From NCBI GenBank assembly GCA_964247055.1, contig OZ176052.1, positions 7,378,001 to 7,442,000 of the forward strand: DNA of 64,000 nucleotides. The letters are read 5' to 3'. Positions 38 through 60,131 of this stretch are shown here, piece by piece. The notes under the pieces were generated by a model. That model worked only from the letters and a program-made list of their open reading frames with translations, had not been told where the DNA came from and did not search any database. Positions within the stretch are counted from its first letter, which is position 1, and each line of letters begins with the position of its first letter. This DNA comes from Paragordius varius. Taxonomy: Eukaryota > Animalia > Nematomorpha. The position numbers and the translations under genes were made by a program.

Positions 38-150
38 CTTACTGTCTTATGCTTACTGTCTTACTATCTTACTGTCTTACCGTCTTACTATCTTACTGTC
101 TTAACGTCTTACTATCTTTCTGTCTTACCGTCTTACTATCTTACTGACTT
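38..150. repeat. Minisatellite of 8-bp units (CTTACTGT/CTTACCGT/CTTACTAT) with a 24-bp higher-order period
   Basis: About 13 consecutive CTTAxxxT units read directly; a three-unit pattern recurs about four times. Confidence 0.9.
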
Positions 151-299
151 AAATTCACATCAGTCTATATCTTAGCGAAATTATATATGTCATGATTTTT
201 GGTTTAAAAATGTAATATGAATATTTATAATTTTAACCGCTATCCAAAGCAATCAGGTAATTACCATAAATATTAATAGGCCTAGACTTATTTTTGTTT

Positions 300-3200
300 T
301 AATTACACTAAACAAGCTATATAACGCTTTTTAAAAAAATCAACGAATCATATTCATAATATTGAAACCAAAATATATATTTTAACATAAAAAGCTAAAA
401 AATATCACGTAATACTTTATAACATTTTGGTCATTTTTATCAGTTGTGGGGATAATATCGTGGACTTTATTGGTGGAAAACTCAGGATCTGTCAGCAACT
501 TGTGATAATTTATGGATTCAAAATTAAGGATTATTGTTTCAAAGGTTAAATGCCTATTTATGTAACTATCACTATTGGCTGAGACAACAAAATTGGAATT
601 ATCCAACAGAAGTGAAAATCTTAATATTTCGCCTACGACCGTGCACACCTAAACATATAAATTGATAAATACAACTATAATAAAGTTAATTAATTAATAT
701 GTTTAATTAATTGTGATATAATAAAAATATAATTTGACACCCAATTATGGAATCAAATAGTGTGACATCTCCTTTATCCAGATTGTGGATATGTTATATC
801 TTAAATAGTAAAAATAAATAAAAATGCCTTTAATTATTTTAAAGATGATAATAAAAATTAAGAATCTTGTATAATTCTCATTGTAAAAACAGGATTAATT
901 GACGATTTTTATATTAAATAATAAAATCAAATAAACTGATATGTAATATAAAACTAATTAACTAGAGTAAGTAATACGAAATAATTTAATTTTACATTAT
1001 GGTTATTTTAAAATATAGATATCCGTTTCATATCAAAAAAATCTATTATATAATAGATTGAACTAAAAAATTTTAATGACACATCTAGGGTTGTGCCAAT
1101 TAGTCAATGACCTAGGGTCATGACCTAGGTCATGACCACGAAAAAAAATGACCTAGGTCAATTTTTTTTATTTTTTTAATTTTACCATTTTTGGGAAAAC
1201 AAAACCTTATATTATCTATATATGTATTATTTTGTTTTAAATATCATACGATACACATCTTTTCTTTACTTCCGAAATTATAATGAAATCAGCCTTGTGG
1301 AAATTTTTCGATCAAAAAAAATCAAGTTACTTGCAAGAAATGCAATTACACTATATATATTTAAATAAAAACCGAATGAAGAAACATCTAAAAGAAGTTC
1401 ATGAAATAAATTATATGACAGAGGGTGATGGTCGAAAGCAATCTAATCATTAAATTTTTTAATTAGTCTTAAAAATTTTTGTTTTTGAGAGAAATTAGCC
1501 AGAAACATTTAGCAAAATTTATTTTTACATCCTCAACTCTTAACATAGTTGAAAATAAACATTTACGGAGTTTCATTTATAGTTTAAATCTAATTATGCT
1601 ATTCCAAATAGAAAACAGATCAATTAATGACTAGATTCGTGTTATGAAGATATAAAAATAGAAGTTATTGGAATATGTAAAAATAATATTTCATTAATCG
1701 TCGATCCCTTTACCAATATTCGTAGGAAGCAAATTAATATTATTTATTGGCCAAGGATCTCAATCATTTTTTATGACACATCTTATCATAGTAAGACTGC
1801 CGAAAGTTTCTATAACATAATGGAACCAATAAAAGATATTCGAAATTTAAAAATTAATGCCATTGTGACCGATAATTCCAGCGAACTGAAGGCTGCTCAA
1901 AATTTGATTAATAAAGAAAATCCTAATATAATATGGCATAAATGCCAATGTCATATTTTAAATAATTTGATTAAAATATATATTAAACTTAATAAGATTA
2001 CTGAAATTTTAAATGTAGTGAGCACGATTATATATTAAATCTAATAAATCGTATAAAAAATTTTCAAGTATATATTTTTTTTGGCATCCTAAGTTAACGT
2101 TAAGTTCATGGACAAGGACTCGTTTTTACACAATCTAAATAATTAGAGCATAGGTTTCAATAAATCCATATTTTCTTCTTAGTCTTAGCTTTCTGTGATT
2201 TGAAACTTTCTATAAGTCTTTATGTATGTTTCCAGGAAAGATCGTCAATTTTAGAAATTTAAATTAATAGTATTGGTGAAAGTATAATTTTAAAAAAATA
2301 TATACTTTATGTAAAAACCTTTTTTATGTAATTAAATCAAGTATTTATGTATGTAGTTCTTTATTATTGGCAATAACATATGGTATGACCTAGGTCAGAC
2401 CCCCTTTTTCAAAAAAAGGGGGTCAAAATCACAACCCTAGACACATCTAACATATATATCTTTTACTCATTAATACCTTATTAAAATCTGACACTGTCGA
2501 AGCTTTCATTTCTCTCCAAGTTCGTATGTATAAGTTGATTGTTAAGACATAAATTTCATATAAACAATGTTTTCGTGTGTAAAGAAGTAAAAGCAATGAT
2601 GTAGGAGCATTGGTGAAATTCAAAACGGAATATTCTAAATTTATGGGGATAAAAATTGAATAAATTTCAATATTACGGTGGTAAATTAAAAGGGATAAAA
2701 ATTCAAATAAAAAGGTTTTAGTTTAGACACAAAAAGTATATATACCTTTTAAGTGCTTCAATGAAAAATAGTCTACGATTGTATTAACAACAAACATGAT
2801 AACATCAATGGCCTTTAACAATTTTTGTCCATTATTTTCCGTTTCTAAGTATTCCATAATCTAAACAAACGAATAATTTAATTGTAATAATTGTTACAAG
2901 TTGCTTCATTTATATATTTGAATCATATTATTTTATAGCGAGCACTGGACAGCATTTAATTTCGTCTTAAATGACTTGAATAAAATTGAAAGCGTTTTAT
3001 CGTTAATATCCGTCGATATTTATGGACCCAAAGACACAGCACAAATTGATAACAAAAGATAGTTCAATACCTTTTCAAAGTTTGAAGAATATGACGAACT
3101 GTGATATAATATACATTTCACAGCAAAGACTCCTGTATCGCTTTCCTCCAAAAATTTTTTAATAGATTGGTTCTAAAAATATATACATCATAATTTATAA

Positions 3201-6200
3201 ACTGCCTATATATATATATATATACTTTATAAACACCCATTATTTGGATTAATTGTATGATTATGGAAAATTCCATTTTTTAGTTCATTTATAAAAATCA
3301 TGTATAATGGACGACCATGTTAAAATTATGAAAATCAGGTAAAAAATTAAAATTATATGATTTAAATTTATTTACCCGAGGTAATTAGATATTTCATTAT
3401 AATTATATATAATATACCATTTTATTCTTTATACATAAAACAAAAAAGTTATACTTATACAAAATTAAAGTAACATTTTAGATATAAAAACAATTTTGGA
3501 ACATATTAGTAGATCGAGAAACGTGAATTTAATATGCAAATGCATTAAACTAATTATATTCCATTTCAACAAACACAAATTTTAGTTTTCTAATCGGTTC
3601 TTTAGTAAGTGATTTTCATGATTATTTTTAATTTATTTATAAACTTCAAATATTTTTAATCAAAATCGTTTATCATTAACGTTCGATGGCGCAGTCATAT
3701 TTATAACATAATGTCCATAAAACATTTTACGATCCTTATTCAAATAAAACTTTGGAGTATTTTTTTTTGTCCAGGATGTAAAACTTATTAAAATTCTTTA
3801 AAAATATAATTATTAAACATTATTTATGTGTATTATATTACTTAAAAACCATTTATTTTTTCAGTTTTTTAATTTAATAATTCGGAAAACTCCAAAATCC
3901 AATTAAATATAAGGGGCGAATTTTCAAAATCGAAAATTAACGAAAAACTCCTGCAAGATTATAAGTGAATGTACACAAAGTTAATTTAAATTATTTTTTT
4001 ATCCCCATATATTTGTGCCACTCTTTTTGCAGATTTTATATATGAAAAATTCGGCGACTAAAGGATCGAAGAATTTTATGATATTACATTTTTTAAAAAT
4101 ATCTTTTTTAATAAGGCGCCAAAAAGGCCATCAAACACATATGATCTGATCCAATATGGTGGCAAACTAAATTAATTATATGGTCTACTAGGTGAAAAGG
4201 TAAACTTGATTGCAAGGATATTGTACAATATCATAATCATCCAGAGCATTCTCAAGGTTATATTTTGAATTTAATTTGCTTTCCACATCAGCAAGAAGAT
4301 ATCTATGATTCTTTTCAATTAAAAAATATGAGTTAATTAAATTTTCAGGTTAAAACAAATAATTTTTACTTCATAGTGTGTATCCAAAGGTACTAATAGA
4401 TTAAATACAGGCCTGAGAATATGGATTTGAAGCAAACACAATTTTTCAACAATATCGGAATGCACGGGATATGGCTTAAAAAATGTCTATAGATAGATAA
4501 TTAAATATTTGTAAAAATATAAATTGATTTTATTTCGGAAAAGATAAATATAAATTACGACAAACCTTAACAATAACATGATTTATATCGGGTTGCATTG
4601 CCAATATTTTTTCAACGGTATCTAGGTGCTATACAAAATATTAGATACATAGTCATTTTCAGGATTAAAAACTTAAACTATTTGTATTTTTTAATAAAAT
4701 ATAATTATAAATAGCATGGCTTAAATTATATATTTAAAATTAACATAATATTATTAGAATATAATTACATTTTAGGGTATGTTATACTGTGAATTAGATA
4801 ACTACTTGAATAAAATACAGAGGCCTTGACTTTAATTTTAAACACTTATGAATAATCTGGGTAAAAATACATATGAAATTGTTAATAACATTATTTTAAA
4901 CTTTTAGAAAAATTCTTTTATAATCATATATCACTATTTTTAATATAGAAGAGTATTAAAAAGGGAAATCACGTATAATTAAAAAGCAAAATGATTTAAT
5001 ATGCAGTCTCATGCATAAGAGATAATATTCTTTTTTTTAAAATTTTACTTGAAAAAATCCCAAATATATTTATTTACCAAAAACAAAATGATTTTATTAA
5101 TTTTTAAACTCATTAGTTTATTTCACTTTTATTAAGTTTAACTTTAAAATTCAAATTGTTTAGCATCGATATAAGTAAAACAAATTACCATTTTTACGTC
5201 ATTATGATATATGGTATCAAGTAAAACCACCATAAAATTTAGCAAAGACAAATGCAACTCGTGTTCCATGCTAAATTATGTTATTATCAAAATAAACCTG
5301 TTAAAATATAATGTTAACATTGGGGGTAGATTGATTGATTGAATAAACGAGAAGTTGCATCTTAAAAAAATAAAATAAACATTTAATTAATTAATACGCA
5401 TTGAAATAGTAATTTGTATTTAAAAGTGATGGTATACGAAAAACAAATAATTTACTCATTGCTAGATAATTAACAAAATTATCAAAATGTTTTTTTAACA
5501 AAAATCTTAATACAATTGATGTGTTAAATATCACATAATTTACAAACAAAAATTAAATACTACATAATGTCATCTTATAAATATAAAAGGAAATACAATG
5601 GAATGATGGCTGACAAAAAGTTAAATATGCGGGTACAAACTTGTCCGTGATATATTATTTGCAAATTATTCAAAATATCGATAATCTAAAACTATTATTA
5701 TATTACAGACTTTGGGTATGTACTCTTCAAGATTAGAGACATCTAGAGCCTCGGTTGTAAGCATGTTATGTAAACAAAATATAAGCTCAGACAATATATT
5801 TAGTTTTGTGTTTCTAACATGTATAATAAATTACTCGTCGGATATATCTAATTTTCGAAAATCTAAAAAATAATTAAAAGCTTTTAGTAGAGAATTAAGT
5901 CCATTGTTTTCAATAAATATTTCATTAAAATATGAGTCTTTGGTATGGCGATTAAATATTAAGAGCTTTTCACTAAACTCTTTTCCGTTAAATAAATCGC
6001 TAACAGCATTTATAACATAATAATTTGATGTCGTTTTCAGTCCGAGCTTATTTAATGTTTCTGCATATAGGCTGCTTTTGCAAGCAAACTCTTTCTCGGT
6101 AGTAAGATTGGATAATATTTGGATGATGTCATTACAAATTCGATACTAAAAGAATTATATAGGATATACAGGCGAAGTTTGGATATGGATAATAGCATTA

Positions 6201-6433
6201 TCTTTTATTTCCTTGAAATTCTAATTTGTATGATAAAAAAACCTTATTGGTTATAAACGTTCCATTGTCACTCACAAGGGCATATTTTTGGTAATCAGGT
6301 AAATTCCACCTACAAATTAATATTTTAACTACTTTTCACAAATAATTTTAAGTAAGAATAAGGGATCGCTGGTTGTGGGAACTGAAATATTTTGTGAAAC
6401 TAACCCGTCTTTTTTAACAACTAATTTGAGCAT
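300..6433 (-). CDS. ELMO: Divergent ELMO/CED-12 family protein, multi-exon, 3' end probably outside window
   Basis: ATG at 6433. Splicing GT-AG introns at 6310-6332, 6221-6242, 6146-6169, 5814-5834 and 5686-5710 gives an open frame MLKLVVKKDG...ICEKWNLPDYQKYALVSDNGTFITNKNFKEIKDNAIIHIQTSP...YFNEIFIENNGLNSLL, resembling the ELMO N-terminus (W-x-L...YAL...ITE-x-N-x-x-EIKNG-x-IL-x-L-x-x-SP; F-x-x-EFI-x-x-x-G). Later exons give EESDTGVFAVKCILY (about 3150) and INLYIRTWREMKASTVSDFNK (2477-2540), matching ELMO TWKEMRATSEDFNK, joined in phase 0 to VCTVVGEILR (648, ORF 382-648). Exons between about 5600 and 3300 are only partly resolved. Confidence 0.72.
1086..2439 (+). mobile_element. Internally deleted hAT DNA transposon inside an ELMO intron
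   Basis: TIRs TAGGGTTGTG (1086) and CACAACCCTA (2430-2439); perfect 8-bp TSD GACACATC at 1078-1085 and 2440-2447; transposase remnants (WKFF...CKKC BED-finger-like; AIVTDNSSE...KCQCHILNNL in ORF 1820-2038; SWTRTRF); subterminal palindromes TGACCTAGGTCA. Confidence 0.92.
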
Positions 6434-9140: not shown

Positions 9141-9777
9141 TGGTGGACATTGTGAAATGAATCGCTTTTATATTTCTGATAAAAGTAAAAATACATTACC
9201 TGAAAAAATTAATTTTATTAATATTATCAACAAAGATACCAACATTTATCAAAAATTTTAAAAAAATTGATGTCTAGTATTGTATTATTACACTGGTCTA
9301 TCCAAAAATAAGTAAGTCACAAAGGCACTTAAAATAATAAAGTTTTATTTATACATACATACATTTTTTGAATAAAAATTCCATCTATTTAATTAATTTT
9401 AATAATAAATATTTAGAGAAGTAGGTAAAGAAATAATTATATTATAAATATGGATGGTATTGCTACAGTGGAGGTCGACTTTTTGCAATATTGTAAAAAA
9501 ACATCTCCATAAATTTTCAATTTTTTGTTATAATGTTGAGTTCTGCCAAGGTTGCATATTTTAATGTATGAAAAAATTCCGGTAACAATAAATAAATAAA
9601 ACTTATTTGGAATATAAGTGAAAACATTCATTAAAGATATAAGATAGGATACGAAACCCCTCGATAGTAATCGAAGACTCGTTTCGTGCTTGTTAAAACT
9701 TATCCGTATGACACGACTATTTGACCTGAGGTCACATAGAAATTTAGTATTATATATACCATTTCCCAGTAAAAAAA

Positions 9778-9945
9778 CGTTTTCCCAGTCAATCGAAATA
9801 TTTTCCCAATCAATCTAAACGTTTTCCCAGTCAATCGAAACATTTTCCAGTCAATCGAAACGTTTTCCCAGTCAATCGAAACATTTTACCAGTCAATAAA
9901 AACATTTTCCCAATCAATAAAAACGTTTTCCCAGTCAATAAAAAC
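9778..9945. repeat. Tandem array of about 8 x 21-bp units (ACGTTTTCCCAGTCAATCGAA)
   Basis: Read directly; units are contiguous with no spacers. Confidence 0.9.
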
Positions 9946-10311
9946 GGTTTTATTTTTGATGATAAATATTAAAACAAGATATAAAAATAACTTTTAACCA
10001 TTATCAGCGTAATATTAATATATTATTTTTTTAAAAAATATAAATTATTGAATGACAATTTTTCTTACTATATTCCAGTGCACAATTATTAATGACTTAT
10101 CCTTTAAAAGTTATATTTTTGGAATTTGAGATGTTTTTAAGATAATATTGTTTATTTTATTGATGGTTCGCATTAATATTTGCGGCTAACTTAAAAAATT
10201 TATAGTTACGGATGAAATAATAACAATAAAAATATACAATTTTTATCTCAAAGGTCATTTAACACTTCTTGGATCTTAACATAAATTTTACCCTAATTTT
10301 ATATTATTAAT

Positions 10312-26604: not shown

Positions 26605-29600
26605 ATGAAGTATTCTATATCAATCGCTGATTATATTATTTTAATATTCTTTCTCATCATATCATGTTCTATTGGGATTGTTTATGCCATCAAAGACAGA
26701 AAAAAAACTAAATTAGACCATGCCTTTGTTGGTAATCGGTATTGCTTAAAATTATTTTAGGAAATTTAAACTTTTTCCAATCGCTTGTTCACTACTTGTC
26801 ACACAAATTTCAGCGATTCTTTTACTTGGAATGCCAGCGGAGTTTTATACTAGAGGTGCTCAATATTGGGTCTATATTATTGGGCAATGGTTGGGGGTAG
26901 TCGTTGCTCTATATATATTTATTCCAGTATTTTGTAATGTTGGGTCTCCGTCGTCTTTTACAGTATTATGATAATTTTATAAATAGTATATTCAAAAACG
27001 TTTTAAATCACCGATTTTAAGGAGTTACTATGCATTGACTTTTATGTTGACTCAAGTATTATTGTCACTTTATTAAATGCTATTTAGCTACTATACGCAT
27101 CTGTTGTTTTATTTGCTCCATGCTTAGCAATCAGTTTAAGTAATTTCATTTTTTTATATAAATTTATTTTGACAGTTGTACCCATTCCTATTACGAAACT
27201 TATATTAATCATTGGAGGAGTTTGTACTTTTTACACATCTATCGTAAGTTTTTTTCATCATATCTCTCTCTAATATATCATGCGACAATTTAACCCTAAA
27301 GCCATATTAACATTAAATTATAATAGATATATACAATAACCACGCTTTCATACATTATGAATTTTAAATGTACTATAATATATGTAAGATATCTGCTAAA
27401 TGTGGCATTAAGTTGTACAAAATTATAAATTTATAACAAGAAATTTTAAATATTCGGGATATATTAATATTGAAACCTTTTATAATTTGGGAGCTAAAGG
27501 TATTTTAGTTTGGTTTTTTTATCAAATTAGCTCTTATTTTTTACATAAAGGAAGTTTTTATTTGTTATTATGCTAGAAATTGCTTTAATATTTCGATTGA
27601 AATTGGGGTGTTTAAATACCCCAGACTATTATAAGATGTATATTTTTTAAAATAACTTCAGACAGAAACGGTTCCAATTTCTATTGCTTCTATCCTAATA
27701 AAAATTATAAAAACGCCGAAATATCCAACTAATATTTAGTAAAATACCATATCAAACTACTTCGACGCCATTTTTATTTTACAAAATTTTTGCAAATTAT
27801 CGTTTATTTAATTTTGAAGTCAAAATTAAAACTAATTCTTTGTTTAAAACATATTAAACATTGATAGAAACAGTAAAAGTGGTTTATTTTGTATTATTTT
27901 CAAATTTAGCTAATTCGCACGTGTCATGTTCACTAAGTTTTACCTCTGGGTTTTACCTTAAAATAAGTATTATTATATATTTTTGAAAGAATTTTTTTAT
28001 ATTTCGGTTTATTCATGGTTATATAAGTGCAAACTTTTGCCATGGTTTCAATTCCTTCCATATTTTTTGAAGTAATTAATTTTAAACAGGCCTGTGTATC
28101 CAAATAACCCAATTTGAATCGAAGGACTGAAATGAATGTGTTGTAACCACGTTAAACTCAAATATTAAAAACTTTAATGAAAAGGCTCATGATTAAAAAT
28201 AAAATTAGCGTTTTTGAAGCGAAAAATAATAATTATATTTAATTTTAAATTTTAATATTTCATATAGCAGTTAAATATAATTTAAACTTTTTATAATAAA
28301 TAACCCTTGGCAAATGTATATTCCTGATTACAATAATGTATTCATTTATATATTTTAAAAACAGTATATTTTGGTCAATTTACATTTATTGTTGGCCAAT
28401 TAGTAATACAGTAGCGTATAATATAAAGCAAATTTTATCCATATTTAATGTTTTAAGATAAAAAAAATTGTAGTTTCAACCATTTGTTGATATTCATACA
28501 CTACTGTATTGCTAATTGGGCAAAAATAATATGAATGAATTTCCTAACAAAAATTTTGATTTAACGTAATTTTAGTCCTTAAAATCTGCTTTGGCCACTT
28601 CAAAAGTTTTTAAATTAATTACCAAGTTATTAATGTTTTTATCTATAAATTTGGGATAAGAAATATAAATCTACAACGTTTAAAGAAGTTCAAAGTAAAA
28701 AATCTATTGTTTTTAATATGCTTTAAGTACTGCTTACCCTAATGTACGGTAATATTTTATATTGTTAGTTCGATTAATAGATTTATTTATTTATTTTACC
28801 CTTATATATTTTAATATTTTCATATTTGGGTTGTATAAAATTTTATGAGTACACTGTCCAATATAATTAATTTATACGATACGATAGCTAAATGGATCAT
28901 TTTGTAGGGTGGATTCAAAACTGTTATATTTACCGATGTGTTTCAATTCCTCATCATATTTATTTCCATCATCATCCTAATGATCAAAGTACATATTTTT
29001 TTATATAACCTCTTTTCTCCAAAATGTTACAAAATATCCATTTAAAGGCAAAACATAAAGGGTAAAAAACTATATTATTGTTACAATGTAAGAAAATAAA
29101 TTTTGATTATTGATATTTAGTTATTTCTACCTAAGATTTCTGTCTTATCAATATATATCTTTCTTTCTTATTTCGCAACCAAATAATGGGTTAAACGAAT
29201 GAAATTTAATTTTTTCAAAAAAAAATAATCTTTAGTTTTAATTCTAATTTCAATTTTATTGCAATTAAAGGGAGTGGGAGAAGTTGGAGGTTTATCCAAA
29301 GTTTACATGGTGGCTCGACAATTAGGACGAATGGAAAGCACATTTAAGTAACACTTTTTGTTTAACTGTACAATTTAAACAACTTTACTGCTGTTTGCTT
29401 GTTTTTGGGAAACATGTATTAACTTAAGATTTTCCTGTTTGCTATGATAAAATTGACAAACTTTAACTTTTTTTTCGCTATAATATCTGGTTAATTATGC
29501 TTTGTCAAGCAACACTTACTTTTTTAACCCTATACTACTAAAAGAAGTATATTATATGCATATAATTTTTTATGTCAATTTAAGAGTATGTGAATACCTT

Positions 29601-34193: not shown

Positions 34194-37100
34194 TCAATAT
34201 GGTAAATCGAAATCCTCCGTAAATGGGTGACATAGTGGAAATGTTTTTGGAGCTTTAACCATTTGATCGAGCGTTCCAATCTTCAAAGCAATCGTCATTC
34301 CCCCAATCAAATGGAACCCAAGATGGCAATGGAAAAGCCAAAATCCTTGAAATACAATACAATTTTATTTAAAAATATTACTGAAGTTTTTTGTTTCTTA
34401 AATTAAAATTATTTTGGCCATAAAAATATAAAACCTGGGTTGTCAGCTTTGAATCTTATTACGCCATATCCACCCTCTGGAACAGTGAATACGTCTTTTA
34501 ATGGAGGATTTTTTACGTTTCTCTCTAACTCGCCTTTACGATCCAATTCTTTTACCTAATTATTAATTCTGATATAGATTATTTTATTAAAGTATTCGAA
34601 TAAGTAAGAAAATTTATACCATTAAATAAAACATTTATTTTACATAACCGAAATATATTTAAATCATATGAAATTTATTAGAATTTATGTTGGTTTAAAC
34701 GATTCGACGCAAAAATTTACTGCCAAAAATTTAAAAATGTTTAATTACCTCCTCCAAAGTTATGTTGTTACTGAGGCGAACTTGGCTTAATACGGCAAAT
34801 GCTGTCCCATGTAAATGAAAGGAATGAATGTTAAACCTACCATTACGTCCTAATAAGAATCATATAAATTTTGGCCGCTTTTTACATTAGTAAAACTATT
34901 ATAAGTTATGTAGGAGAGCTCAATCAATCTACCAGCAAAAATATACAGTATTTGTCCTATTTATTAATCTATTATTCCATAGCAATCACAAATAAAACCT
35001 GCCTTTATATCTAGAATTTCATTTTTTTCAAAAGATTAACAACCATACATATGTGTTTAATCATAAATCCGATTTATAAGGTATATTACACAAAAAATTG
35101 ATTAAAATATTTAAATCATTTTTTCATAATACCTTCATCTACTACCACGAATTCTATGACATCTCCAAACTGTATATCATACTTTTGAATACATTTACAT
35201 TTTTGGCTACCATTCAAACAGTGGGCATGTGTCGTTTCCACATTGCAAAACAGAGACGAGTCCACATCTTCGAATTGCGTTAATAAGGGTGCAGGGGGAG
35301 GATCAAACGTTATATTGTTAATATTTGGTGTAGCTAATGTTAAAAAAATCATAATTAAATGTTTTGCACGGAGTTTAAAATTTAACATTTATAAAAAAAT
35401 TATTAAAACTATATTTACAAAAATAATAATATTTTTATTTGATAAGGAGTGTGTTATAGGGATAATTTTTAATCATGATATAGAATTATTCTAGTATTAA
35501 AGTATAACGATATAATTTCTTTTTACACCATAAGACAATATTTATATTCAGGGAACAAAGCTAAACTCTTGGGCTAATGCCTAAATTTTTGTAACTATTA
35601 TTAGAGTATAATTAGGAAAAGTTTTAAAATCATGAATCTTATAAATTTCTGATTAAATTTAGAAACAAAATTTATTATTAAAATATATATTTGATAACAG
35701 ACTATCCACATACAAATATCTAATAACAAAGGATATCAAATACAACATATGGGCGCTTTGAATTTGGTTTCCCAGTCATAACCAATCAATTGATATATAA
35801 TATATAAATTTTAAAAGAAATTAAAAATAGTTAATAAATAAAATGTATTTCTGTATCCATGAAATATATTTGACAATCGCATGCTCAGGGCTGAGATTAA
35901 CAATGGAAAAATTGTGGGGGAACAGGATTACAATTTTGACAATGCGAATCAGTTATCCAATTTAAACAATTTGCTATTTATACTATTAACATTATATAAA
36001 ACGCAGTTAAATGAAAATTTTATAAAAATTTGAAATCTGAGAATATGTTGTAATTGAATTTATTTTTAATTTCATCAATTCTTTCGTTATTTATAAATGC
36101 TAATAATATTTTGATATATAATTAAGGTGACCAGACAGACGTCCCGCTTTAAGGTGACCAGACGTCCCGCTTTTTCACACTTTGTCCCGCGTCCCGCTAC
36201 GTTTTTAAAATGTCCCGCTTTTTCACGATTATATAAAAAAAAAATTTTTTTAATACAAATAAATTTTTTTTATCCGTTTAAATTTTTTATCATTAAATAT
36301 CTTTAAATTCTATTCAATTTTAAATTAAATTTTTTATTTTTAAATTAAAAATATTTATTTTTTTCAAATTTATATAATATGACTATACACCTACTACTAC
36401 TGTCATCATTACCAAAACCCAAGTTAATACCACAAATCTCTAGATTAAAAGACAAATTGATCGGTACCTTACACGTTTATTCCAGAAAATTAAGGTAATA
36501 TAATATTTATTATACTAATAGTAGTTAATATATATGAGCACAAAAGGAGGTTGTAAATTCAACGATGAATTAATGAAAGATTTTCCTTTTATCAAAAAAA
36601 ACGAAGAATGAATCATCTGTTAAATGTCTTATAAGCGAGGGGGAATTCACCCTAGCACATGGCGGCAAGCATGATATTACAAAGCATATGGAAACACAGA
36701 AACATAAAAATTTTTTAGATATGGCGGCATCATCTTACAAAATGAGCGATTTTTTTCGAAAAACCGCTTTTGGAGAGGAAGAAAAGAATTTGGCATTAGC
36801 TGAGGGCGTGTTATCTTTTCACGCCGTTAATCACAATCATTTCTTTAGATCTATGGACTGTACCTCACAAGTTATTCGCACGTTATTCCATAAAAAATTT
36901 ACATGTGCCCGTACAAAGGCTGAAGCCATTGTGTGCCACGTCCTTTCGCCACATGCATTTTCTGAAATACAAAAAGATTTGCTGAAAATTAATTTCTTAT
37001 CCCTATACTCTGATGCATCAAATCACCATAAACAAATTTATTTCCCACTTTAATAGGATATATTGATTCAGAAACCGGAGTAAAAACTAATTTAGATTTA

Positions 37101-40100
37101 ATTTCTATACCCGGTGAAAATTCCGAAATAATATTTACTTCAATAATGCATATGCTAGAAAAAAATTTAAAAGACAAAATTATCGCATATTGCGCTGACA
37201 ACACCAATACGAACTTTGGCGGAAAAGCAAGGAGGGGAACAAAAAATATTTTTCATAAATTAAGAGATAATCCTAATCAAAACATTATTGGCGTTGGGTG
37301 TGCAGCGCATATAATACACAACGCTATTCAAACAGCTGCTGATTTGTTACCCCTAGATGTGGAAAATGTAGTTGTTAAAATATATTCCTATTTTTATATA
37401 TACACGGTACGTGTTGAAACGCTTAAAAAATTCTGTGAAAATGCAGAAGTTCAATATCAAAAAATGCTTAGATAATGTAAAACTCGTTGGTTGGCTTTTA
37501 TGCCAGCTATCGAAAGAATTTTAAAAATGTATGATCCTTTAAAATCGTTTTTTATCACAGGACAAATGTCCTACAACTTTAAAAAAGTTTTTTTGAAAGT
37601 GATTCTTCAAAAATATGGTTAGAATTCTTACATAATCAAGCTTCTCTCTTTCAAAATGTTAAATTTATAGAAGGTGACATAATTTCAGCTATCGAAGTAG
37701 CCAATGAAGTTAGTAACCTAAAATTCCAATGTCAAGAACGGTTAGAAAATAATTTTATACCATTAACCATCCGCAATATAATAAATAATTTAAAAAAACA
37801 AGGTAAATTGCCAAGATATCCGTACCATATAAAAACGTTTTATACAAACTGTAAAGAATATTTGGAAGACTGGACGACGCAATTTAATGTAATTGATCAT
37901 TTTCATTGGATAACATTAAAATCAGAATTTAAGTGTTTGTTCAAAAATCATTTGATTATATCTGCTCCCAAAAATTCTCAAAAAGTAATATTCTGAAGTA
38001 TCATTAGTTAAAAGATAGATTAATAATGAAAAACTTAAATTATGTACAAAAGAAAAATATACAGTAGAAAAGAAATGGTTGAAAAAATTTCATCATTTTG
38101 AAGCCAACTATATTACATACAATAATATTTTAAAAATTGTGGAATTCGCACTATCTTTACCTGGAACCAACGCTGTTACTGAGCGCGTTTTTTCCACAGT
38201 AAATCAGGTGTGGATTACGGAAAATCAAATTTAAATGTTGAAACTTTAAAGGCCGTTTTATCTGTCAAATATAATTTGACAAATTCTTGTGAAGACTTTT
38301 ACAATATTTTAAAAAATGATGACAATCTGCTAAAACGCATTCACTCAAGCAAAAAATATACCAGAGAATAAAATATTTTCTTTAAAGTTTTTGTGTTAAA
38401 AAATAAACAAAATTACTTAAAATATTGTATAAGTCTTCATAATTTGTCAAATTATATTTGAACACATATAATGGCTTTTATTCAACATTTAAATTTAATT
38501 CGGTGTCCTTACTTAATTTACTGTGGAAAAACGCGTTCAATAGCAGTGGTTCAGGTAAAGATAATGCAAATTCTACAATTAAAATATTATTGTATAGAAC
38601 ATAATTTGTTTAAAAATTATTTTAACCATTTCTACGTATTTTTTTCTGTTGCCCATAATATAAGTTTTCATTCAATATATTTATTTAATAATGAGACTTC
38701 ATAAAAAAGTGTCATTGTGCACCGTCTTGTCTTCCAAATAATCGTTTCTGTTTGGATAAAACATTTTTATATTTTGGCTATTCATTGAGCCTTGTTTTTC
38801 TGGATGCTTTAGGTAATGATATAAAATTATTTTCTAACCTTTTTTGACTTGGAATTTTGACCTTTGTCCTGTGATAAAAAATAGGATTCTAGGAGATCAC
38901 ATTTTTATAAATATTTCAATCGCTGGCAAAAGAGCTAACCAACAGTTCTACAATATCCAAGCATTTTAACATCTATATTTTCCACATCCAGGGGTAACAA
39001 ATCAGTAGCTATTTGAATAGCGTTGTGTATCTGCCAATAATGTTTTGATTAAGATTATTCGCTAAATTATTAAAAATATTTTTTGGATTGCTTCTTGCAT
39101 CACCCAGTACAATTTGTGATGATTTCGTCTTTATTATTTTTTTCTAGAATATTACAATCACTTCACCCTTTGTTCGTGCACATGTAAATTTATTGAATAA
39201 GGTACAAACAACCTGTAAGGAACAAATTTTTTTATATTTATAATGTATTTGTGTTAAAAATAAATAAATATTACAATAAATTTTTTGTATAAAAATTTTT
39301 GGTTGTACCTCCAATGAACCCCCCCCCTCCCCCCTTCTCAGATTTGTCCCGCATTTTTCTTCAAAAAATCTGGTCACCTTATATATAATATATAAATTTT
39401 AAAAGAAATTAAAAATAGTTAATAAATAAAATGTATTTCTGTATCCATAAAATATTTGACAATCGCATGCTCAGGGCTGAGATTAACAATGGAAGAATTA
39501 TGGAGGATAGGATTACAATTTTGACAATGCGAATCAGTTATCGGAGCGACTCTACCAACAAAACAAATTAAAACAATTTGCTATTTATACTATTAACATT
39601 ATATAAAACTCAGAATTCAGTTAAAATTTGAAATCTCAGAATTTTTTGCATATTGAATTTTTATTTTTAAATTTATCAATTCTTTCGTTATTTATGATGC
39701 TAATAATACTATTGGTGATTTTATTTAATATTGCTTTTTTTCGATTGGGGTATGATGTTTATAACCACGAATTACTGCATACATAGATAACTTTTATTTT
39801 AAAATTTCGCTGGAAAAAATTTCTCTGTTACATACATATTGTTAAAATAAGGAAATCGAATATCTTTAAAAGTATGATTTATAAACATACGATTTCCAAC
39901 AGCACTATCCACAAACAAATAAAATTTGTGGTCCACATACTCCAAATTTAATTCATCATCCATAGTTGATCTTAAATCGCTTGTTTTAACATAGTTTGAA
40001 TTTGTACTGTAATCCGGTAAAAAGGAAGGATTATAAATCTAAAAATATAATTGAAGGAAGCGCTAATTATATAAGTTGTTTTTTTTGAAAAGTAATTAAA

Positions 40101-43423: not shown

Positions 43424-44591
43424 ACTATACAAATTTTTTTCTATTATTTTATAAAAATATTTAATGATGAGATTAAATTTTATCATAAATATTTAATACC
43501 TGTCTCAAACTTATCACAAACAATTTTGTCACAATTGTCCTTCAACCGTTTAATCTATTAATTGAATGTAAAACTTTATGTTTTTAGAATGATTTATATT
43601 TAACTTGCTAATATATTGCATATAATAAATTACAGATAATATTCAATGTATAATAAAAGAAAATTAATTGGCCATTATTAATAACATGATATAATATATT
43701 AAAAATGTTAGCTAACCTTTTGACAAAAATGGAAATAGTTTAACACTGAGTCTCATCTAAGGTGTTTATGTGATTAATATTAGGCAACGTCCTTATTATT
43801 GTAAAATTTAAACGAACATTATATAAATTAATTAACATCTATTTTTGTTACAAATTAAATTTTTTATAAAAACCTGTAAATTACACTGCGTCCAAGAATT
43901 ATCTATATTCTGATGGATGAATGTATCAGAATTTTCATGGTACTTTGAGTTTTAGGGCTCACGAGTTGCACCTTTTGTGGTAATTGCTGGATATCGAATG
44001 GCAATATTAGCACACATTATGTTTGATAAAAAAATTTTGGTACAAGCTTTATGCTTTATTTCAAAAAATATAATTTAAATATACGATATACCATATTTAT
44101 AAAGCAAAACAATATTTTTATAAAATCCTAATTTTTAGATGTAGGCCCGAAAGTCCCAAGTTTGTATTCCCTTACTAAAATGAGCTAATTCTCTTAAAAT
44201 AAACGGAAAAATCCGATATTTAACGTATAATTTTTATTATATGGTAAACTATGGCATCGAAAAAACATACTTTTGAAAAAATGCATATTTTGTTAAAAAT
44301 ATAATTTTTAGCAAAATTTGTTAAGGCGTATTTTATATTATTTTCAGGAAAGATAAAACATCATAAAAACGCTTTAAGCCAGTTTGGTTCTCATTCCACC
44401 AAATTTAAAAAAATTCTTGCTCCCTCCCCCCCCCACCCCCTTTCTTTCCAAAAAAACCTTCAATTTATTTTTAGTTTTATTTTTTATTGAACCAAGGCTG
44501 AGAATCCAGTTTGACTTAATCCATAAGGTGTCAAAATATGTAAGTTATTTTGAAATATTTTTGGATACAGGTTATGTGCTTTTATATAAAA

Positions 44592-45787
44592 TCGTGCTGC
44601 TACGCAGCCCGAGGAAGTCCTTCGGACTTCTGGGGGGGGGGGGGGGGGTTCGAAGTTTGGATTTGAATGGGTCTACCGTTTTTCCTGTAGATCACAAAGC
44701 CAGCATTTTCCATTTTTATAAATATATAGATTACCATAAATGATGTTTTAATATCCATATATCTTTTAACATGCTATACATATGATAGATACTCTTTACT
44801 CAGCAGCTATCATCAAAGAAACGCTTGACTAAAATTTTTGCCTTTTAACAGGCAATACGAAAAATCTTTCTCGAATTTTTACAGTCTCATACCGTGGGCA
44901 AAAAAATACAATCAAAAAAATATTTTTGTGGACTTTGTTTTTTTTGAAAAAAATGGCATTTTACGGGGGGAGCGGGTAAAAAGAGGGCCTAAATCAAAAA
45001 AGTGACTCGACTATGTTCGGCGCAATCGAAAATAAGTAAACCAAAATCATATTTGAAATTGAATGGTCCAACACGTTCTCCAAAAAATTGACTTAACCCA
45101 TTTTTCACACGGGGTGGGCCCAAACTGGGGACCTAATTCCAAAAAAGGGCGAAGCTATTGTCGGGGCATTCATTAATGATTATATTTTTTCGATGTTTGG
45201 ATTTGAATGGGTTCACCGGTTTTCCGGAAACAGATCACAAAGTTATATGAAAAATCAGTTTTTAGCGGGTAGCTCCTTACCCAGCAGCTATCATCAAATA
45301 AACGGTGGACTAAAATTTTTGCCTTTTAACAGGGAATACGTGGAATCTTTATTGAATTTTTACGGTCTCATACCTAAGGCGAAAAATCGATTTAAAAAAT
45401 TATTTCTGTGGACTTTGTTTTTTGAAAAAAATGGCATTTTACGGGGGGAGCGGGTAAAAAGAGGGCCTAAATCAAAAAAGTGGCTCGGCTATGTTCGGCG
45501 CAATCGAAAATAAGTAAACAAAAATCATATTTGAAATTGAATGGCCCAACACGTTCTCCGGAAAATTGTCTCAAAAACACGATTTTGTGGACTTCTGTTT
45601 TCAAAAAAAACCCGTTTTTCATACGGGGTGGGCCCGAACTGGGGGCCTATTTAAAAAAAAGGGCGAAGCTATTGTCGGGACATTTATTAATGATTATATT
45701 TTTTCGATATTTGGATTTGATTGGGTCTACCGGTTTTCCTGTACCAGATCACAAAGCCAGCATTTTCCATTTTTATAAATATATAGA
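44592..45787 (-). mobile_element. Non-autonomous Helitron, composite copy R1 (3' CTAG missing)
   Basis: Reverse complement of 58914-60120 at high identity; A|TCTATATATTTATAAAA 5' end at 45787, internal second 5' end at 44730, two about 514-bp internal units, terminal hairpins present. Confidence 0.8.
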
Positions 45788-45839
45788 TTTCTCGATATTA
45801 AGATTAGCAAATTGATTAATTAATTGAATCATATTCACA

Positions 45840-45970
45840 GTTTAATGCCTCTTCCTGCACTTCTATCGGAAGAGTGTGATTGCATCAAACTGTAAATGGA
45901 TTTATTGTTAAGTTAACTGACCATTCAGATAAAGGTTTGGAAAGTGCAAATTCCTCCACAAAAATTAATT
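45840..45970 (-). mobile_element. Possible short Buster-type hAT transposase remnant
   Basis: EEF...EW...INPFTV*..LPIEVQEEAL resembles the W-x-x-NPF...LP...QEEL stretch of Buster/Charlie transposases; short and weak. Confidence 0.3.
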
Positions 45971-46402
45971 ACTAAATAATAAATGAATGATTGGATAATG
46001 GACTTGTAGGTCCAATCAAAGATCGGAAACTGAACGAATTAAAAAAATATGTTTGAATATTTTGCATAATAATTATAGCTTTTTAATGCTGTTTTATTTT
46101 TTTTATATGATAGTACGTATTAAGAACCAGTAAAATAAATAGTTAAATACACTATGTGTGAATTTAACAATCTAACAATGATCACTTCTCAATATTGTAA
46201 CTTAGTATCTAAATTACAGTGAGTAAGTATATATTGCTAGAATGTTATTAATTATTGCAAAATAGATGCAGAAAAGATTATTATTGGCTAATAATAGTAA
46301 AAAGTGAAAAAATAACTATAAGCTAATAATACCCTTTGTTGTATATGTTATTTAGTAATAATAAATAACTTTCTAGCAATGTATACTTACTCAAACTGTA
46401 AA

Positions 46403-47109
46403 TCCTATATATTTATAAAAATGGAAAATGCTGGCTTTGTGATATGGTACAGGAAAACCGGTAGACCCATTCAAATCCAAACTTCGAAAAAATATAATCA
46501 TAAATAAATGTACCGACAATAGCTTCGCCCTTTTTTGGAATTAGGTCCCAAGTTCGGGCCTACCCCGTGTGAAAAATGGGTTAAGTCAATTTTTTGGAAA
46601 ACGTGTTGGACCATTTATATTCAAATATGATTTTTGTTTACTTATTTTTGATCGCGCTGAACATATTCTACTCACTTTTTTGATTTAGGCCCTCTTTTTA
46701 CCCGCTACCCCCGTAAAATGCCATTTTTTTCAAAAAAAACAAAGTCCACAAAAAATTTTTTGATTGTATTTTTTTGCCCAAGGTATGAGCCTGTAAAAAT
46801 TTGATAAGGATTTTTCGTATTCCCTGTTAAAAGGTAAAAATTTTAGTCAAGCGTTTCTTTGATGATAGCTGCTAACTAAGGAGTTTCTATCATATGTATA
46901 AATATTTTTTTAAATCTTTTTTCCCCTAAGTAAACAATAAATGTATGAATGCACCGTTGTAAAATTCCTATGAGATCCTATCTATTAGATATTGTTTCGA
47001 AATAATCCACATATGTGGATCATTTTATTGTTACTTTTTTCACATAACCCCCCCTCCAGAAGTCCGAAGGACTTCTATGGGCTGCGTAGCAGCACGAGAT
47101 TTACGCTAG
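46403..47109 (+). mobile_element. Non-autonomous Helitron R2a
   Basis: 5' TCCTATATATTTATAAAA; 3' hairpins AGAAGTCC-GAA-GGACTTCT and GCTGC-GTA-GCAGC followed 12 nt later by CTAG|T. Confidence 0.85.
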
Positions 47110-47112
47110 TAA

Positions 47113-48159
47113 TCTATATATTTATAAAAATGGAAAATGCTGGCTTTGTGATCTGGTTCAGGAAAAACGGTAGACCCATTCAAATCCAAACCTCGAAAAT
47201 ATATAATCATTAATGAATGCCCCGACAATAGCTTCGCCCTTTTTTTGTAATAGGCCCCCAGTTCGGGCCCACCCCGTATAAAAAACGGGTTTTTTTTGAA
47301 AACACAAGTTCACAAAAATCGTGTCTTTGAGGCAATTTTCCGGAAAACGTGTTGGTCGATTTCAAATATGATTTTTTTCACTTGTTTTCGATTGCTCCGA
47401 ACATATTCGGCTTACTTTTTAAATTTAGGCTCTCTTTTTACCCGCTCCCTCCGTAAAATGCCATTTTTTTCAAAAAAACTAAATAATTTTTTGCTTAGAG
47501 TATGAGACCGTTATAATTGAATGAAGATTCCAGCTATTCCCTGTTAAAAGGCAAAAATTTTAGTCAGGCGTTTCTTTGATGATAGCTGCTGGGTAAGGAG
47601 CTACCCGCGAAAAACTGATTATTCATGTAACTTTGTGATCTGTTTCCGGAAAACCGGTGAACCCATTCAAATCCAAACATCGAAAAAATTTAATCATTAA
47701 TGAAGGCCCCGACAATAGCTTCGCCCTTTTTTGGAATTAGGTCCCCAGTTTGGGCCTACCCCGTGTGAAAAATGGGTTAGGTCAATTTTTTGGAGAACGT
47801 GTTGGACCATTAAATTTCAAATATGATTTTAGTTTACATATTTTTGATCGCGCTTAACATAGTCGACTTACTTTTTTGATTTAGGCCCCCTTTTTACCCA
47901 TACCCCTGTAAAATGCCATTTTTTTCAAAAAAAAACAAAGTCCGCAAAAATAATTTTTTGATTGTATTTTTTTGCCCAAGGTATGAGACTGTAAAAATTA
48001 GCTGCTGGGTAAGGAGCTACCCGCGAAAAACTGATTTTTCATGTAACTTTGTGATATGGTACCGGAAAACCGGTAGACCCAATAAAATCCAAACTTCGAA
48101 CCCCCCCAGAAGTCCGAAGGGCTTCCTCGGGCTGCGTAGCAGCACGAGATTTACGCTAG
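47113..48159 (+). mobile_element. Non-autonomous Helitron R2b, head-to-tail with R2a
   Basis: A|TCTATATATTTATAAAA ... GCTGCGTAGCAGCACGAGATTTACGCTAG|T; two about 490-bp internal units. Confidence 0.88.
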
Positions 48160-58913: not shown

Positions 58914-60131
58914 TCTATATATTTATAAAAATGGAAAAATGCTGGCTTTGTGATCTGGTACAGGAAAACCGGTAGACCCAATCAAATCCAAATATCGAAA
59001 AAATATAATCATTAATAAATGTCCCGACAATAGCTTCGCCCTTTTTTTGAAATAGGCTCCCAGTTCGGGCCCACCCCGTATGAAAAACGGGTTTTTTTTG
59101 AAAACAGAAGTCCACAAAATCGTGTTTTTGAGACAATTTTCCGGAGTACGTGTTGGACCATTCAATTTCAAATATAATTTTTGTTTACTTATTTTCGATT
59201 GCGCCGAACATAGTCGAGCCACATTTTTGATTTAGGCCCTCTTTTTACCCGCTCCCCCCGTAAAATGCCATTTTTTTCAAAAAACAAAGTCCACAAAAAT
59301 AATTTTCTAAATCGATTTTTCGCCCTAGGTATGAGACCGTAAAAATTCAATAAAGATTCCACGTATTCCCTGTTAAAAGGCAAAAATTTTAGTCCACCGT
59401 TTATTTAATGATAGCTGCTGGGTAAGGAGCTACCCGCTAAAAACTGATTTTTCATATAACTTTGTGAACTGTTTCCGGAAAACCGGTGATCCCAATCAAA
59501 TCCAAATATCGAAAAAATATAATCATTAATGAATGCCCCGACAATAGCTTCGCCCTTTTTTGGAATTAGGTCCCCAGTTCGGGCCCACCCCGTGTGAAAA
59601 TTGGGTTAAGTCAATTTTTTGGAGAACGTGTTGGACCATTCAATTTCAAATATGAATTTTGTTTACTTATTTTTGATCGCGCTGAACATAGTCGAGTCAC
59701 TTTTTTGATTTAGGCCCTCTTTTTACCCGCTACCCCCGTAAAATGCCATTTTTTTTCAAAAAAAAAAACAAAGTCCACAAAAATATTTTTTTGATTGTAT
59801 TTTTTTGTCCACGGTATGAGACTGTAAAAATTCGAGAAAGATTTTTCGTATTGCCTGTTAAAAGGCAAAAATTTTAGTCAAGCGTTTCTTTGATGATAGA
59901 TGCTGAGTAAGGAGTATCTATCATATGCATAGCATGTTAAAAGATATATGGATATTAATACATTATTATCCTCATCTATATATTTATAAAAATGGAAAAT
60001 GCTGGCTTTGTGATCTGGTACAGGAAAAACGGTAGACCCATTCAAATCCAAACTTCGATCCCCCCCCTCCCCCCCCCCCAGAAGTCCGAAGGACTTCCTC
60101 GGGCTGCGTAGCAGCACGAGATTCACGCTAG
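58914..60131 (+). mobile_element. Non-autonomous Helitron, composite copy R3
   Basis: A|TC start at 58914, CTAG|T end at 60131, double terminal hairpin, two about 514-bp internal units, internal second 5' end at 59975. Confidence 0.88.

What the first reader, a model, noticed from the sequence alone, without database searches (positions are those of the whole stretch)
5686..6332. Five consecutive 21-25 nt GT-AG micro-introns in the ELMO gene
Introns of 23, 22, 24, 21 and 25 nt (6310-6332, 6221-6242, 6146-6169, 5814-5834, 5686-5710; a 27-nt one at 5271-5297) each restore an ELMO-like frame. The two whose length is a multiple of 3 (21 and 24 nt) contain in-frame TAA stops, as expected for real introns. 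Such sizes are far below typical animal minima and are known from only a few reduced animals (e.g. dicyemids, myxozoans). Here they coexist with 64 nt to several-kb introns in the same window, implying a spliceosome handling two very different size regimes.
Basis: partly seen in the sequence, partly recalled or inferred. Interest (0 to 1): 0.78.

Follow-up and report, generated by a model that had tools for sequence, protein, structure and literature searches.

The report
Tiny introns in a worm ELMO gene
The start of this animal's ELMO (cell-engulfment and motility) gene is very probably split by five real introns of only 21-25 bases plus a sixth of 27; they belong to a genome-wide class of tiny introns sitting beside normal and kilobase-long ones, in what is most likely a horsehair worm, a group for which I found no published report of such introns.

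Summary
All six GT-AG segments are at the stated coordinates on the minus strand (23, 22, 24, 21, 25 and 27 nt). Removing the first five joins six open pieces into 741 nt (247 codons) from the ATG at 6433.

- **Chance:** a chance fit is unlikely. Random inserts of the same lengths give a joint P of about 6e-7. All six segments end in TAG (P about 8e-4). They are more AT-rich than the exons (P = 0.0035).
- **ELMO identity:** it rests on one downstream exon (window 2471-2596) that matches the ELMO domain and ELMO1/ELMO2 structures. The 5' exons have no detectable relatives, so "ELMO-like frame" is unproven there.
- **In-frame stops:** these are expected by chance in this AT-rich DNA and are not evidence.
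- **RNA:** none could be found.
- **Same genome, BiP gene:** it needs a 23-nt and a 28-nt GT-AG intron to restore the invariant GIDLGTTYS-C-VGV motif.
- **Intron sizes:** of 55 profile-anchored introns in HSP70 and Ras genes, 12 are estimated at 19-31 nt, none at 32-45 and 43 at 46-3,214.
- **Spliceosome:** U1 and U2 snRNAs are canonical.
- **Organism:** mitochondrial coding palindromes point to Nematomorpha.

The scan has already found this intron class many times elsewhere in this genome, so this is one more instance.

The parts
6333..6433 (-). Exon 1, 101 nt, ATG at 6433-6431
   Evidence: Open frame from the ATG to the first donor
6310..6332 (-). Intron 1, 23 nt, GTAGTT...TTTGTAG, splits a codon after its second base (AA|G)
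   Evidence: one GT-AG solution; chance P = 0.13
6243..6309 (-). Exon 2, 67 nt
6221..6242 (-). Intron 2, 22 nt, GTTTTT...AATTAG. A second in-frame GT-AG solution exists, which I read as 31 nt
   Evidence: two GT-AG solutions; chance P = 0.21
6170..6220 (-). Exon 3, 51 nt
6146..6169 (-). Intron 3, 24 nt, GTATAT...TTTTAG, in-frame TAA and TAG
   Evidence: (chance P = 0.017)
5835..6145 (-). Exon 4, 311 nt. A 103-codon open frame in about 24% G+C DNA, single copy in the genome
   Evidence: Predicted all-helical at low confidence
5814..5834 (-). Intron 4, 21 nt, GTAATT...TGTTAG, in-frame TAA
   Evidence: (chance P = 0.006)
5711..5813 (-). Exon 5, 103 nt
5686..5710 (-). Intron 5, 25 nt, GTCTGT...TTTTAG
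   Evidence: chance P = 0.21
5597..5685 (-). Exon 6. The start is firm; the 3' end is inferred (donor GTATTTCC at 5596, alternative donor 18 nt upstream)
   Evidence: Read; phase worked out by hand; inference
5361..5596 (-). Intron 6, about 236 nt (or about 254), ordinary size, ends TTTTTAAG
   Evidence: Inferred. The micro-intron-only chain ends near 5578
5298..5360 (-). Exon 7, 63 nt (inferred)
   Evidence: Open frame
5271..5297 (-). Intron 7, 27 nt, GTTTAT...ATTTAG, in-frame TAA
   Evidence: Its flanking exons are less secure than those of introns 1-5
5189..5270 (-). Exon 8, 82 nt (inferred), followed by a long intron that starts GTAATTTG
2471..2596 (-). Exon encoding the end of the ELMO domain (LYIRTWREMKAS..DFNKVLM). 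This is the anchor for calling the gene ELMO
   Evidence: Pfam ELMO_CED12 positions 136-176, 22.7 bits. The four PDB matches are all ELMO2/ELMO1, residues 441-488, E = 0.0026-0.011

Best explanation
These are genuine U2-type (GT-AG) spliceosomal introns of 21-27 nt at the 5' end of a fast-evolving ELMO/CED-12 gene. They belong to a discrete micro-intron class of roughly 19-31 nt that this genome keeps alongside ordinary introns of 46-300 nt and 0.3-3 kb. The genome is most likely that of a horsehair worm (Nematomorpha).

Shown here:
- The segments are there, restore one frame, and do so far beyond chance.
- They share a T-rich TTTAG/TTAG end and an AT excess with micro-introns proven by homology in the same genome.
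- U1 and U2 snRNAs are canonical.

Inferred:
- Each intron is recognised as one unit (intron definition), with a minimal GTW donor, a branch adenosine about 8-12 nt before the 3' end, a pyrimidine run of 3-5 T, and TAG.
- A retained intron shifts the frame or meets a stop, so unspliced RNA would be cleared by nonsense-mediated decay.
- The 5' clustering (introns 1-5 of this gene) may reflect help from the cap-binding complex in recruiting U1 to weak cap-proximal donors. This last point is speculation.
For: - Coordinates and frame restoration.
- Chance controls: Markov maximum 399 nt against 741 nt observed. Random-insert joint P about 6e-7, and GT-AG is the only one of 16 matched pairs that solves all five junctions.
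- Properties not used to pick the segments: T at position -3 in 6 of 6 (background 0.304, so P about 8e-4), and G+C of 18% in the introns against 30% in the exons (Fisher P = 0.0035).
- Proof of the class in the same genome: in the BiP gene (L034), exon 1 aligns to GRP78 chain 3iuc_A residues 25-38 and exon 2 to residues 40-115. Residue 39 is the codon split by a 23-nt GT..TTTAG segment. Pfam HSP70 positions 13-87 and 93-436 flank a 28-nt GT..TTTAG segment.
- Size classes: of 55 profile-contiguous exon pairs in HSP70 and Ras genes, 12 are estimated at 19-31 nt, none at 32-45 and 43 at 46-3,214 nt. The estimator returned 28 for the 28-nt BiP intron.
- Canonical snRNAs.
- ELMO anchor on the same strand.
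Against: - No transcript of this gene could be found, so splicing is not observed.
- Exons 1-5 have no detectable homologue in Pfam, PDB, 5.8 billion clustered proteins or 1.84 billion representatives. Continuity of homology across these particular junctions is therefore untested.
- My ORF-only scans of 264 kb found no excess of GT-AG over control dinucleotides. The background from open frames in repeats was too high, so these scans were uninformative rather than contrary.
- A codon-usage score could not even distinguish exon 4.
- The donors are weak: by my hand count, 5 or 6 of 9 positions match the U1-complementary consensus.
- The 27-nt intron and exons 6-8 rest on open frames only.
Confidence: 0.85

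Rival explanations
1. The gene is a decayed ELMO pseudogene. The frame breaks are small indels, and the GT-AG ends are a chance fit.
For: No RNA was found, and the 5' exons have no homologues. In this AT-rich DNA a single junction finds a GT-AG solution by chance up to 21% of the time. Control dinucleotide pairs also build chains of 4-5 'introns' somewhere in 264 kb.
Against: The joint chance for all five junctions is about 6e-7. All six segments end in TAG (P about 8e-4) and are AT-enriched. A 103-codon open frame at about 24% G+C is not expected in a decayed gene. The same kind of segment is required in the essential BiP gene.
Confidence: 0.06
2. The introns are real, but some boundaries or exon assignments are wrong. 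Candidates are a larger second intron (which I read as 31 nt) in place of the 22-nt one, a different end for exon 6, or a 27-nt segment that is not an intron.
For: Junction 2 has two in-frame GT-AG solutions. Exons 6-8 and intron 6 are inferred from open frames only.
Against: Junctions 1, 3, 4 and 5 each have a single solution. The 22-nt choice matches the 22-29 nt cluster seen genome-wide.
Confidence: 0.3
3. The segments are removed by something other than the spliceosome, such as DNA elimination of the ciliate IES type or translational bypassing.
For: None found here. It is considered only because introns under 30 nt are so rare in animals.
Against: The segments have GT-AG ends with a T-rich YAG acceptor. 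U1 and U2 are canonical and multicopy. The same genes also carry ordinary introns.
Confidence: 0.01
4. The 5' exons and the downstream ELMO-domain exon belong to two different genes, so this is not 'the ELMO gene'.
For: Exons 1-5 match no ELMO model or structure. Exon 4 only looks like a generic helical or ARM-type repeat.
Against: The exons are on the same strand and in the right order, and the open pieces between 5600 and 2700 resemble ELMO's middle region by eye (the comparison is from memory and untested). ELMO proteins do carry an N-terminal helical-repeat region.
Confidence: 0.1

Closest known systems
Ultra-short introns of myxobolid myxozoans and Dicyema japonicum (PMC13644364, Mol Biol Evol 2026)
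   Same: These are GT-AG introns of about 20-30 nt in an animal. The donor is reduced to roughly GTa/GTw. There are A residues a few bases upstream of the 3' end. The U2 branch-binding sequence is canonical. The hosts are parasites.
   Different: In those groups the median intron is 22-27 nt, so nearly all introns are short. Here only about a fifth of the sampled introns are micro (12 of 55), and they share genes with introns of 46 nt to 3 kb. The paper describes acceptors reduced to bare AG in non-myxobolid myxozoans and Dicyema; here TTTAG/TTAG is kept (11 of 11 have T at -3). The words 'nematomorph' and 'gordi' do not occur in that paper's main text.
Bimodal, position-biased introns of neodermatan flatworms (Gyrodactylus salaris, Echinococcus; PMC4040987)
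   Same: There are two length classes within one genome. The short class dominates ordinal intron positions 1-2 and the long class dominates later positions. This matches ELMO introns 1-5 and BiP introns 1-2.
   Different: The flatworm short mode is about 32 nt or more (Gyrodactylus modes about 32 and 58). Here the short class is 19-31 nt, with a gap at 32-45. The phylum is also different.
Tiny introns of ciliates (Paramecium about 25 nt, Stentor 15-16 nt; PMC5014332, PMC9505925)
   Same: The sizes are similar, the termini are GT-AG, and a canonical snRNA set is retained.
   Different: Ciliates have essentially only tiny introns. In Paramecium, introns whose length is a multiple of 3 are enriched for stops above chance (from my own knowledge of the field). 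Here the stops are at chance level.
ELMO/CED-12 proteins (ELMO1, ELMO2; PDB 6idx, 6tgb)
   Same: One exon aligns to ELMO2 residues 441-479 and ELMO1 residues 444-482, including the TW.EM.A...DFNKV motif.
   Different: The rest of the protein is too divergent for a formal match. The PH domain was not located, because the gene runs off the window start.

Membership tests
U2-type GT-AG spliceosomal intron | GT at the 5' end and AG at the 3' end | tested here: met
   All six segments
U2-type GT-AG spliceosomal intron | Removal restores one continuous reading frame, beyond chance | tested here: met
   741-nt chain against a null maximum of 399 nt; joint P about 6e-7
U2-type GT-AG spliceosomal intron | Pyrimidine at -3 (YAG) with a short pyrimidine run | tested here: met
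   T at -3 in 6 of 6 ELMO introns and 11 of 11 overall; T at -4 in 9 of 11
U2-type GT-AG spliceosomal intron | Homology to relatives runs uninterrupted across the junction | tested here: inconclusive
   For ELMO, no relatives were detectable for exons 1-5. The feature is met for the BiP control in the same genome
U2-type GT-AG spliceosomal intron | Absent from the mature mRNA | not testable with these tools
   No transcript-derived protein or contig for this gene turned up
U2-type GT-AG spliceosomal intron | Branch-point adenosine paired with U2 | tested here: inconclusive
   U2 keeps GUAGUA. From the sequences, every intron has A residues at about -7 to -12, but in 80-90% A+T sequence this is not informative
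Animal ultra-short intron genomes (Dicyema / Myxobolidae type) | Introns under 30 nt exist | tested here: met
Animal ultra-short intron genomes (Dicyema / Myxobolidae type) | Short introns are the bulk of the genome's introns (median 22-27 nt) | tested here: not met
   12 of 55 sampled introns are 19-31 nt; 28 exceed 300 nt
Neodermatan-type bimodal, 5'-biased introns | Two separate length modes, with the short mode at the first ordinal positions | tested here: met
   A gap at 32-45 nt in 55 introns. ELMO introns 1-5 and BiP introns 1-2 are micro and later ones are longer
Neodermatan-type bimodal, 5'-biased introns | Short mode at about 32 nt or more | tested here: not met
   The short class here is 19-31 nt
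ELMO / CED-12 family | ELMO domain (Pfam PF04727) | tested here: inconclusive
   One exon scores 22.7 bits against a cut-off of 23.3, covering profile positions 136-176 only. It is backed by the four PDB matches, all ELMO1/2, E = 0.0026-0.011
ELMO / CED-12 family | N-terminal armadillo-like region (PF11841) and C-terminal PH domain (PF16457) | tested here: inconclusive
   PF11841 found nothing anywhere in the genome. The only PF16457 match is on another contig.
Nematomorpha (organism assignment) | Long zero-spacer palindromes embedded in mitochondrial protein-coding genes (PMC6649704) | tested here: met
   Palindromes of 262 bp and 194 bp lie inside the nad1 and atp6 reading frames of contig C44. 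G+C of 27% is close to the 26.9% of Gordionus. The 110.5-Mb assembly is smaller than the 200-300 Mb of published nematomorph genomes

The most novel reading that the evidence does not exclude
Horsehair worms would be a third, independent animal lineage with introns under 30 nt. Unlike dicyemids and myxobolids, they would keep these introns as a sharply separate class (about 19-31 nt, with nothing at 32-45) inside genes that also carry kilobase introns, and they would splice them with a fully canonical U1/U2 machinery. If so, one spliceosome handles both regimes in the same transcript. It would also mean that standard annotation and BUSCO settings, which in my understanding often do not model introns this short, mis-model many nematomorph genes. 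Part of the reported low completeness and the 'gene loss' in this phylum could then be an artefact.
Probability: 0.6. Interest if true: 0.72.

Novelty: new member of a known kind. Interest (0 to 1): 0.55.

Why it matters
A paper from September 2026 (PMC13644364) states that animal introns under 30 nt are known only from myxobolid myxozoans and Dicyema, and predicts that more lineages will turn up. This genome appears to be one, and it has a useful difference. Tiny and kilobase introns sit in the same genes, so the minimal requirements for splicing can be compared within one transcript and one spliceosome.

There is also a practical consequence. In my understanding, many gene finders and splice-aware aligners use minimum intron lengths above this size, and would then break these genes into frameshifted fragments. 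That could depress BUSCO scores (71.6% was reported for Gordionus) and inflate claims of gene loss in Nematomorpha. This is an inference and was not tested.

The ELMO case itself adds one more gene to a class that this scan has already flagged repeatedly in the same genome.

Tried and rejected
1. **Relatives of the 5' exons.** Pfam on exons 1, 2, 4 and 5, PDB phmmer on exons 4 and 2, a word search with exon 4 and the 1.84-billion representative search with exon 4 (two spurious repeat proteins) all failed. The N-terminal resemblance to ELMO1 that I see by eye comes from a remembered sequence and counts only as a lead.
2. **Other ELMO pieces.** The ORF at 3023-3172 and the ORF at 4340-4486 gave no ELMO match in the PDB. 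A word search with the ELMO-domain ORF was blank.
3. **Organism or RNA through proteins.** The 880-aa Ig/FN3 ORF gave only generic Ig hits. Ten exact-ORF look-ups were all absent from the collection.
4. **Structure.** The single-sequence AlphaFold model of exon 4 had pLDDT 45.6, too poor for a fold search. The protein-atlas hits were weak ARM/HEAT-type leads only.
5. **ORF-only genome tests on 264 kb.** I scanned adjacent-ORF junctions and multi-intron chains with GT-AG against control dinucleotides. There was no GT-AG excess. Open frames in repeats and transposons swamp the few true cases, so I rejected these as underpowered.
6. **Codon-usage likelihood.** The score is weak, and exon 4 itself is not distinguished.
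7. **Short exons of the neighbouring SLC5A gene.** Only its 67-aa exon is detectable (SSF positions 11-67; SMVT residues 68-126). The 23- and 45-aa exons are not.
8. **More genome.** Fetching stopped after 200 kb, so I could not read the 3' part of ELMO or the Ras loci.
9. **Joined model.** It was only translated inside scripts to check the frame.
Full report
**What is in the sequence**

On the minus strand an ATG at 6433 opens a frame that is broken five times within 750 nt. A sixth segment of 27 nt lies at 5297-5271. A dynamic-programming search was allowed to skip only GT..AG segments of 20-30 nt. It picks precisely these five and yields 741 open nucleotides, with pieces of 101, 67, 51, 311, 103 and 108 nt.

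**Is it more than chance?**

The local DNA is about 24-27% G+C, so by my estimate from base composition about one random codon in eleven is a stop.

- Chains from 3,000 Markov-random sequences never exceeded 399 nt.
- The stricter rival is a frameshifted pseudogene whose breaks happen to be bridged by GT-AG. To test it I kept the exons, replaced each segment by random sequence of the same length, and asked how often any frame-restoring GT-AG solution of 18-40 nt exists. The answers were 0.13, 0.21, 0.017, 0.006 and 0.21, giving a joint value of about 6e-7.
- Of 16 composition-matched dinucleotide pairs, only GT-AG solves all five junctions.
- Two properties played no part in choosing the segments. 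All six end in TAG (the background frequency of T before AG is 0.304, so P is about 8e-4). Their G+C is 18% against 30% in the flanking exons (Fisher P = 0.0035).
- The in-frame stops in the 21-, 24- and 27-nt segments are real. They occur in 47-61% of random segments of the same length and phase, so they are not evidence.
- Junction 2 has a second GT-AG solution, which I read as 31 nt.

**Is it the ELMO gene?**

About 3 kb downstream on the same strand, an exon at 2471-2596 matches the last 41 positions of Pfam ELMO_CED12. The score is 22.7 bits, just under the 23.3 cut-off. The open frame containing it has four PDB matches, all ELMO2 or ELMO1, covering residues 441-488 at E = 0.0026-0.011.

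Exons 1-5 themselves matched nothing:
- Pfam
- PDB
- the word-indexed protein collection
- the 1.84-billion representative library, which gave only two spurious repeat proteins

Exon 4 is single-copy in the genome. It is predicted helical at low confidence, and its nearest language-model neighbours are ARM/HEAT-type repeats. By eye, the translation across junctions 1-3 resembles the N-terminal domain of ELMO1. That comparison is with a sequence I remember, so it is a lead and not a test. Exons were searched one by one, by reference. "ELMO gene" is therefore reasonable for the locus, but "ELMO-like frame" is unproven for these exons.

**Does this genome really splice such introns?**

No RNA was reachable for this gene, so I looked for proof by homology elsewhere in the same assembly.

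- **BiP gene.** A six-frame HSP70 profile search found a BiP-type gene on contig C4. Its first exon ends ...GKAVGIDLGTTYS followed by TG. A segment GTTTATTAAAATATAATTTTTAG (23 nt) follows. The next exon begins with T and continues VGVHTNGQVQIIANDQGNRITPS.
- **Contiguity in solved structures.** On GRP78 chain 3iuc_A, exon 1 aligns to residues 25-38 and exon 2 to residues 40-115. Residue 39 is the split codon. On HSC70 chain 5aqm_A the same pattern is 8-21 and 23-97.
- **Second BiP intron.** A 28-nt GT..TTTAG segment separates Pfam HSP70 positions 13-87 from 93-436. The invariant HSP70 N-terminus cannot be read without removing these segments.
- **Size classes.** I used the exon-by-exon profile coordinates of HSP70 and Ras-family genes. 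Intron length was estimated as the genomic gap plus three times the profile overlap, and the estimator returns 28 for the 28-nt BiP intron. Among 55 profile-contiguous exon pairs, 12 fall at 19-31 nt, none at 32-45, 11 at 46-120, 4 at 121-300 and 28 at 301-3,214.

A discrete micro-intron class beside ordinary and long introns is therefore supported by my own sample.

**The rest of this gene and window**

- After exon 6 the ELMO gene needs an ordinary intron of about 236 nt, then the 27-nt one, then longer ones (inferred from open frames).
- The neighbouring SLC5A gene starts with GT-AG segments of 22, 24 and 32 nt. Its second exon matches the SSF family and the SMVT transporter. Its shorter exons are too small to test.

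**Machinery**

The genome has many U2 and U1 genes. The best U2 keeps the branch-binding GUAGUA, and the best U1 keeps the 5' ACUUACCUG. There is no sign of an unusual spliceosome. By my hand count the ELMO donors are weak, with 5 or 6 of 9 positions complementary to U1. Across 11 micro-introns the donor is GTA in 6, GTT in 4 and GTC in 1. The acceptor is (T)TTAG, with T at -3 in 11 of 11. Every intron has A residues about 7-12 nt from its 3' end, but that means little in sequence that is 80-90% A+T.

**Organism**

Protein searches did not reveal a close relative. The mitochondrial contig (C44) carries zero-spacer palindromes of 262 and 194 bp inside the nad1 and atp6 reading frames. This is the peculiarity described for Nematomorpha (PMC6649704). 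The 27% G+C is close to the 26.9% of Gordionus. The 110.5-Mb assembly is smaller than the 200-300 Mb of the published nematomorph genomes. It is probably another species.

**Literature**

- PMC13644364 (September 2026) surveyed 51 animal genomes and found introns under 30 nt only in myxobolids and Dicyema. The words 'nematomorph' and 'gordi' do not occur in its main text.
- The Gordionus genome preprint never uses the word intron.
- PMC4040987 describes flatworm genomes with bimodal introns, in which the short mode (about 32 nt in Gyrodactylus) dominates intron positions 1-2. This is the closest analogue of the positional pattern here.

**What failed**

- ORF-only scans of 264 kb showed no excess of GT-AG over control dinucleotide pairs. 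Open frames in repeats and transposons drown the few true cases, so these scans say nothing either way.
- A codon-usage score was too weak to use.

**Verdict**

The six segments are very probably real spliceosomal micro-introns (confidence 0.85). They are one instance of a class that earlier agents of this scan have already reported many times on other DNA of this genome. I have now anchored that class with an independent homology proof (BiP) and a small profile-based length survey. RNA evidence for this gene is still missing.

Noticed in passing
L034:1477-1499 and L034:1732-1759 (G000:C4:12482291-12482313 and 12482546-12482573): The BiP/GRP78 gene has a 23-nt and a 28-nt GT..TTTAG intron. The first splits the Cys codon of the invariant GIDLGTTYSCVGV motif. 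The third intron of the gene is about 69 nt.
   Followed up: yes
L027:53-314 and L027:4064-4257 (mitochondrial contig G000:C44): Zero-spacer palindromes of 262 bp (95% complementary) and 194 bp (99%) lie inside the nad1 and atp6 reading frames. A tandem array of 72-bp palindromic units sits at about 770-1472, just upstream of cox1.
   Followed up: partly
G000:C5:5361143-5361730 (+) and G000:C2:7964739-7965373 (-): Two Ras-family genes each appear to have three consecutive micro-introns, estimated at 22, 22 and 19 nt and at 29, 28 and 23 nt. The estimates come from profile coordinates only, because the DNA could not be fetched.
   Followed up: partly
G000:C3:257000-528000: Many of the 46 U2 snRNA matches cluster in this interval of contig C3, with scores from 178 down to 38 bits. 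It looks like an array of U2 genes and decayed copies.
   Followed up: no
window 26605-27248 (+): The SLC5A-type transporter gene starts with GT-AG segments of 22, 24 and 32 nt, and possibly one of 25. Only its 67-aa second exon could be matched to the family.
   Followed up: partly
window 61359 to L004:2023 (+): A single uninterrupted open frame of 1,555 codons encodes Ig and fibronectin-III domains in a noticeably G+C-richer stretch (about 37%). No close relative was found.
   Followed up: partly
window 44378-47502 and 58918-60214, both strands: There are several copies of a G+C-richer repeat with long overlapping open frames (motifs such as PVFHTGWARTG..KKGEAIVG.FINDYIFS). These contributed much of the background in the ORF-based tests.
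   Followed up: no
window 36577-38231 (+) and L015:261-701 (+): Open frames here resemble a hAT/ZBED-type transposase by eye (no family search was run on them), with a second related copy about 137 kb away.
   Followed up: no
window 9748-9994 (+): A tandem repeat is open in two frames and encodes reiterated FPVNRNIFPVN-like peptides.
   Followed up: no
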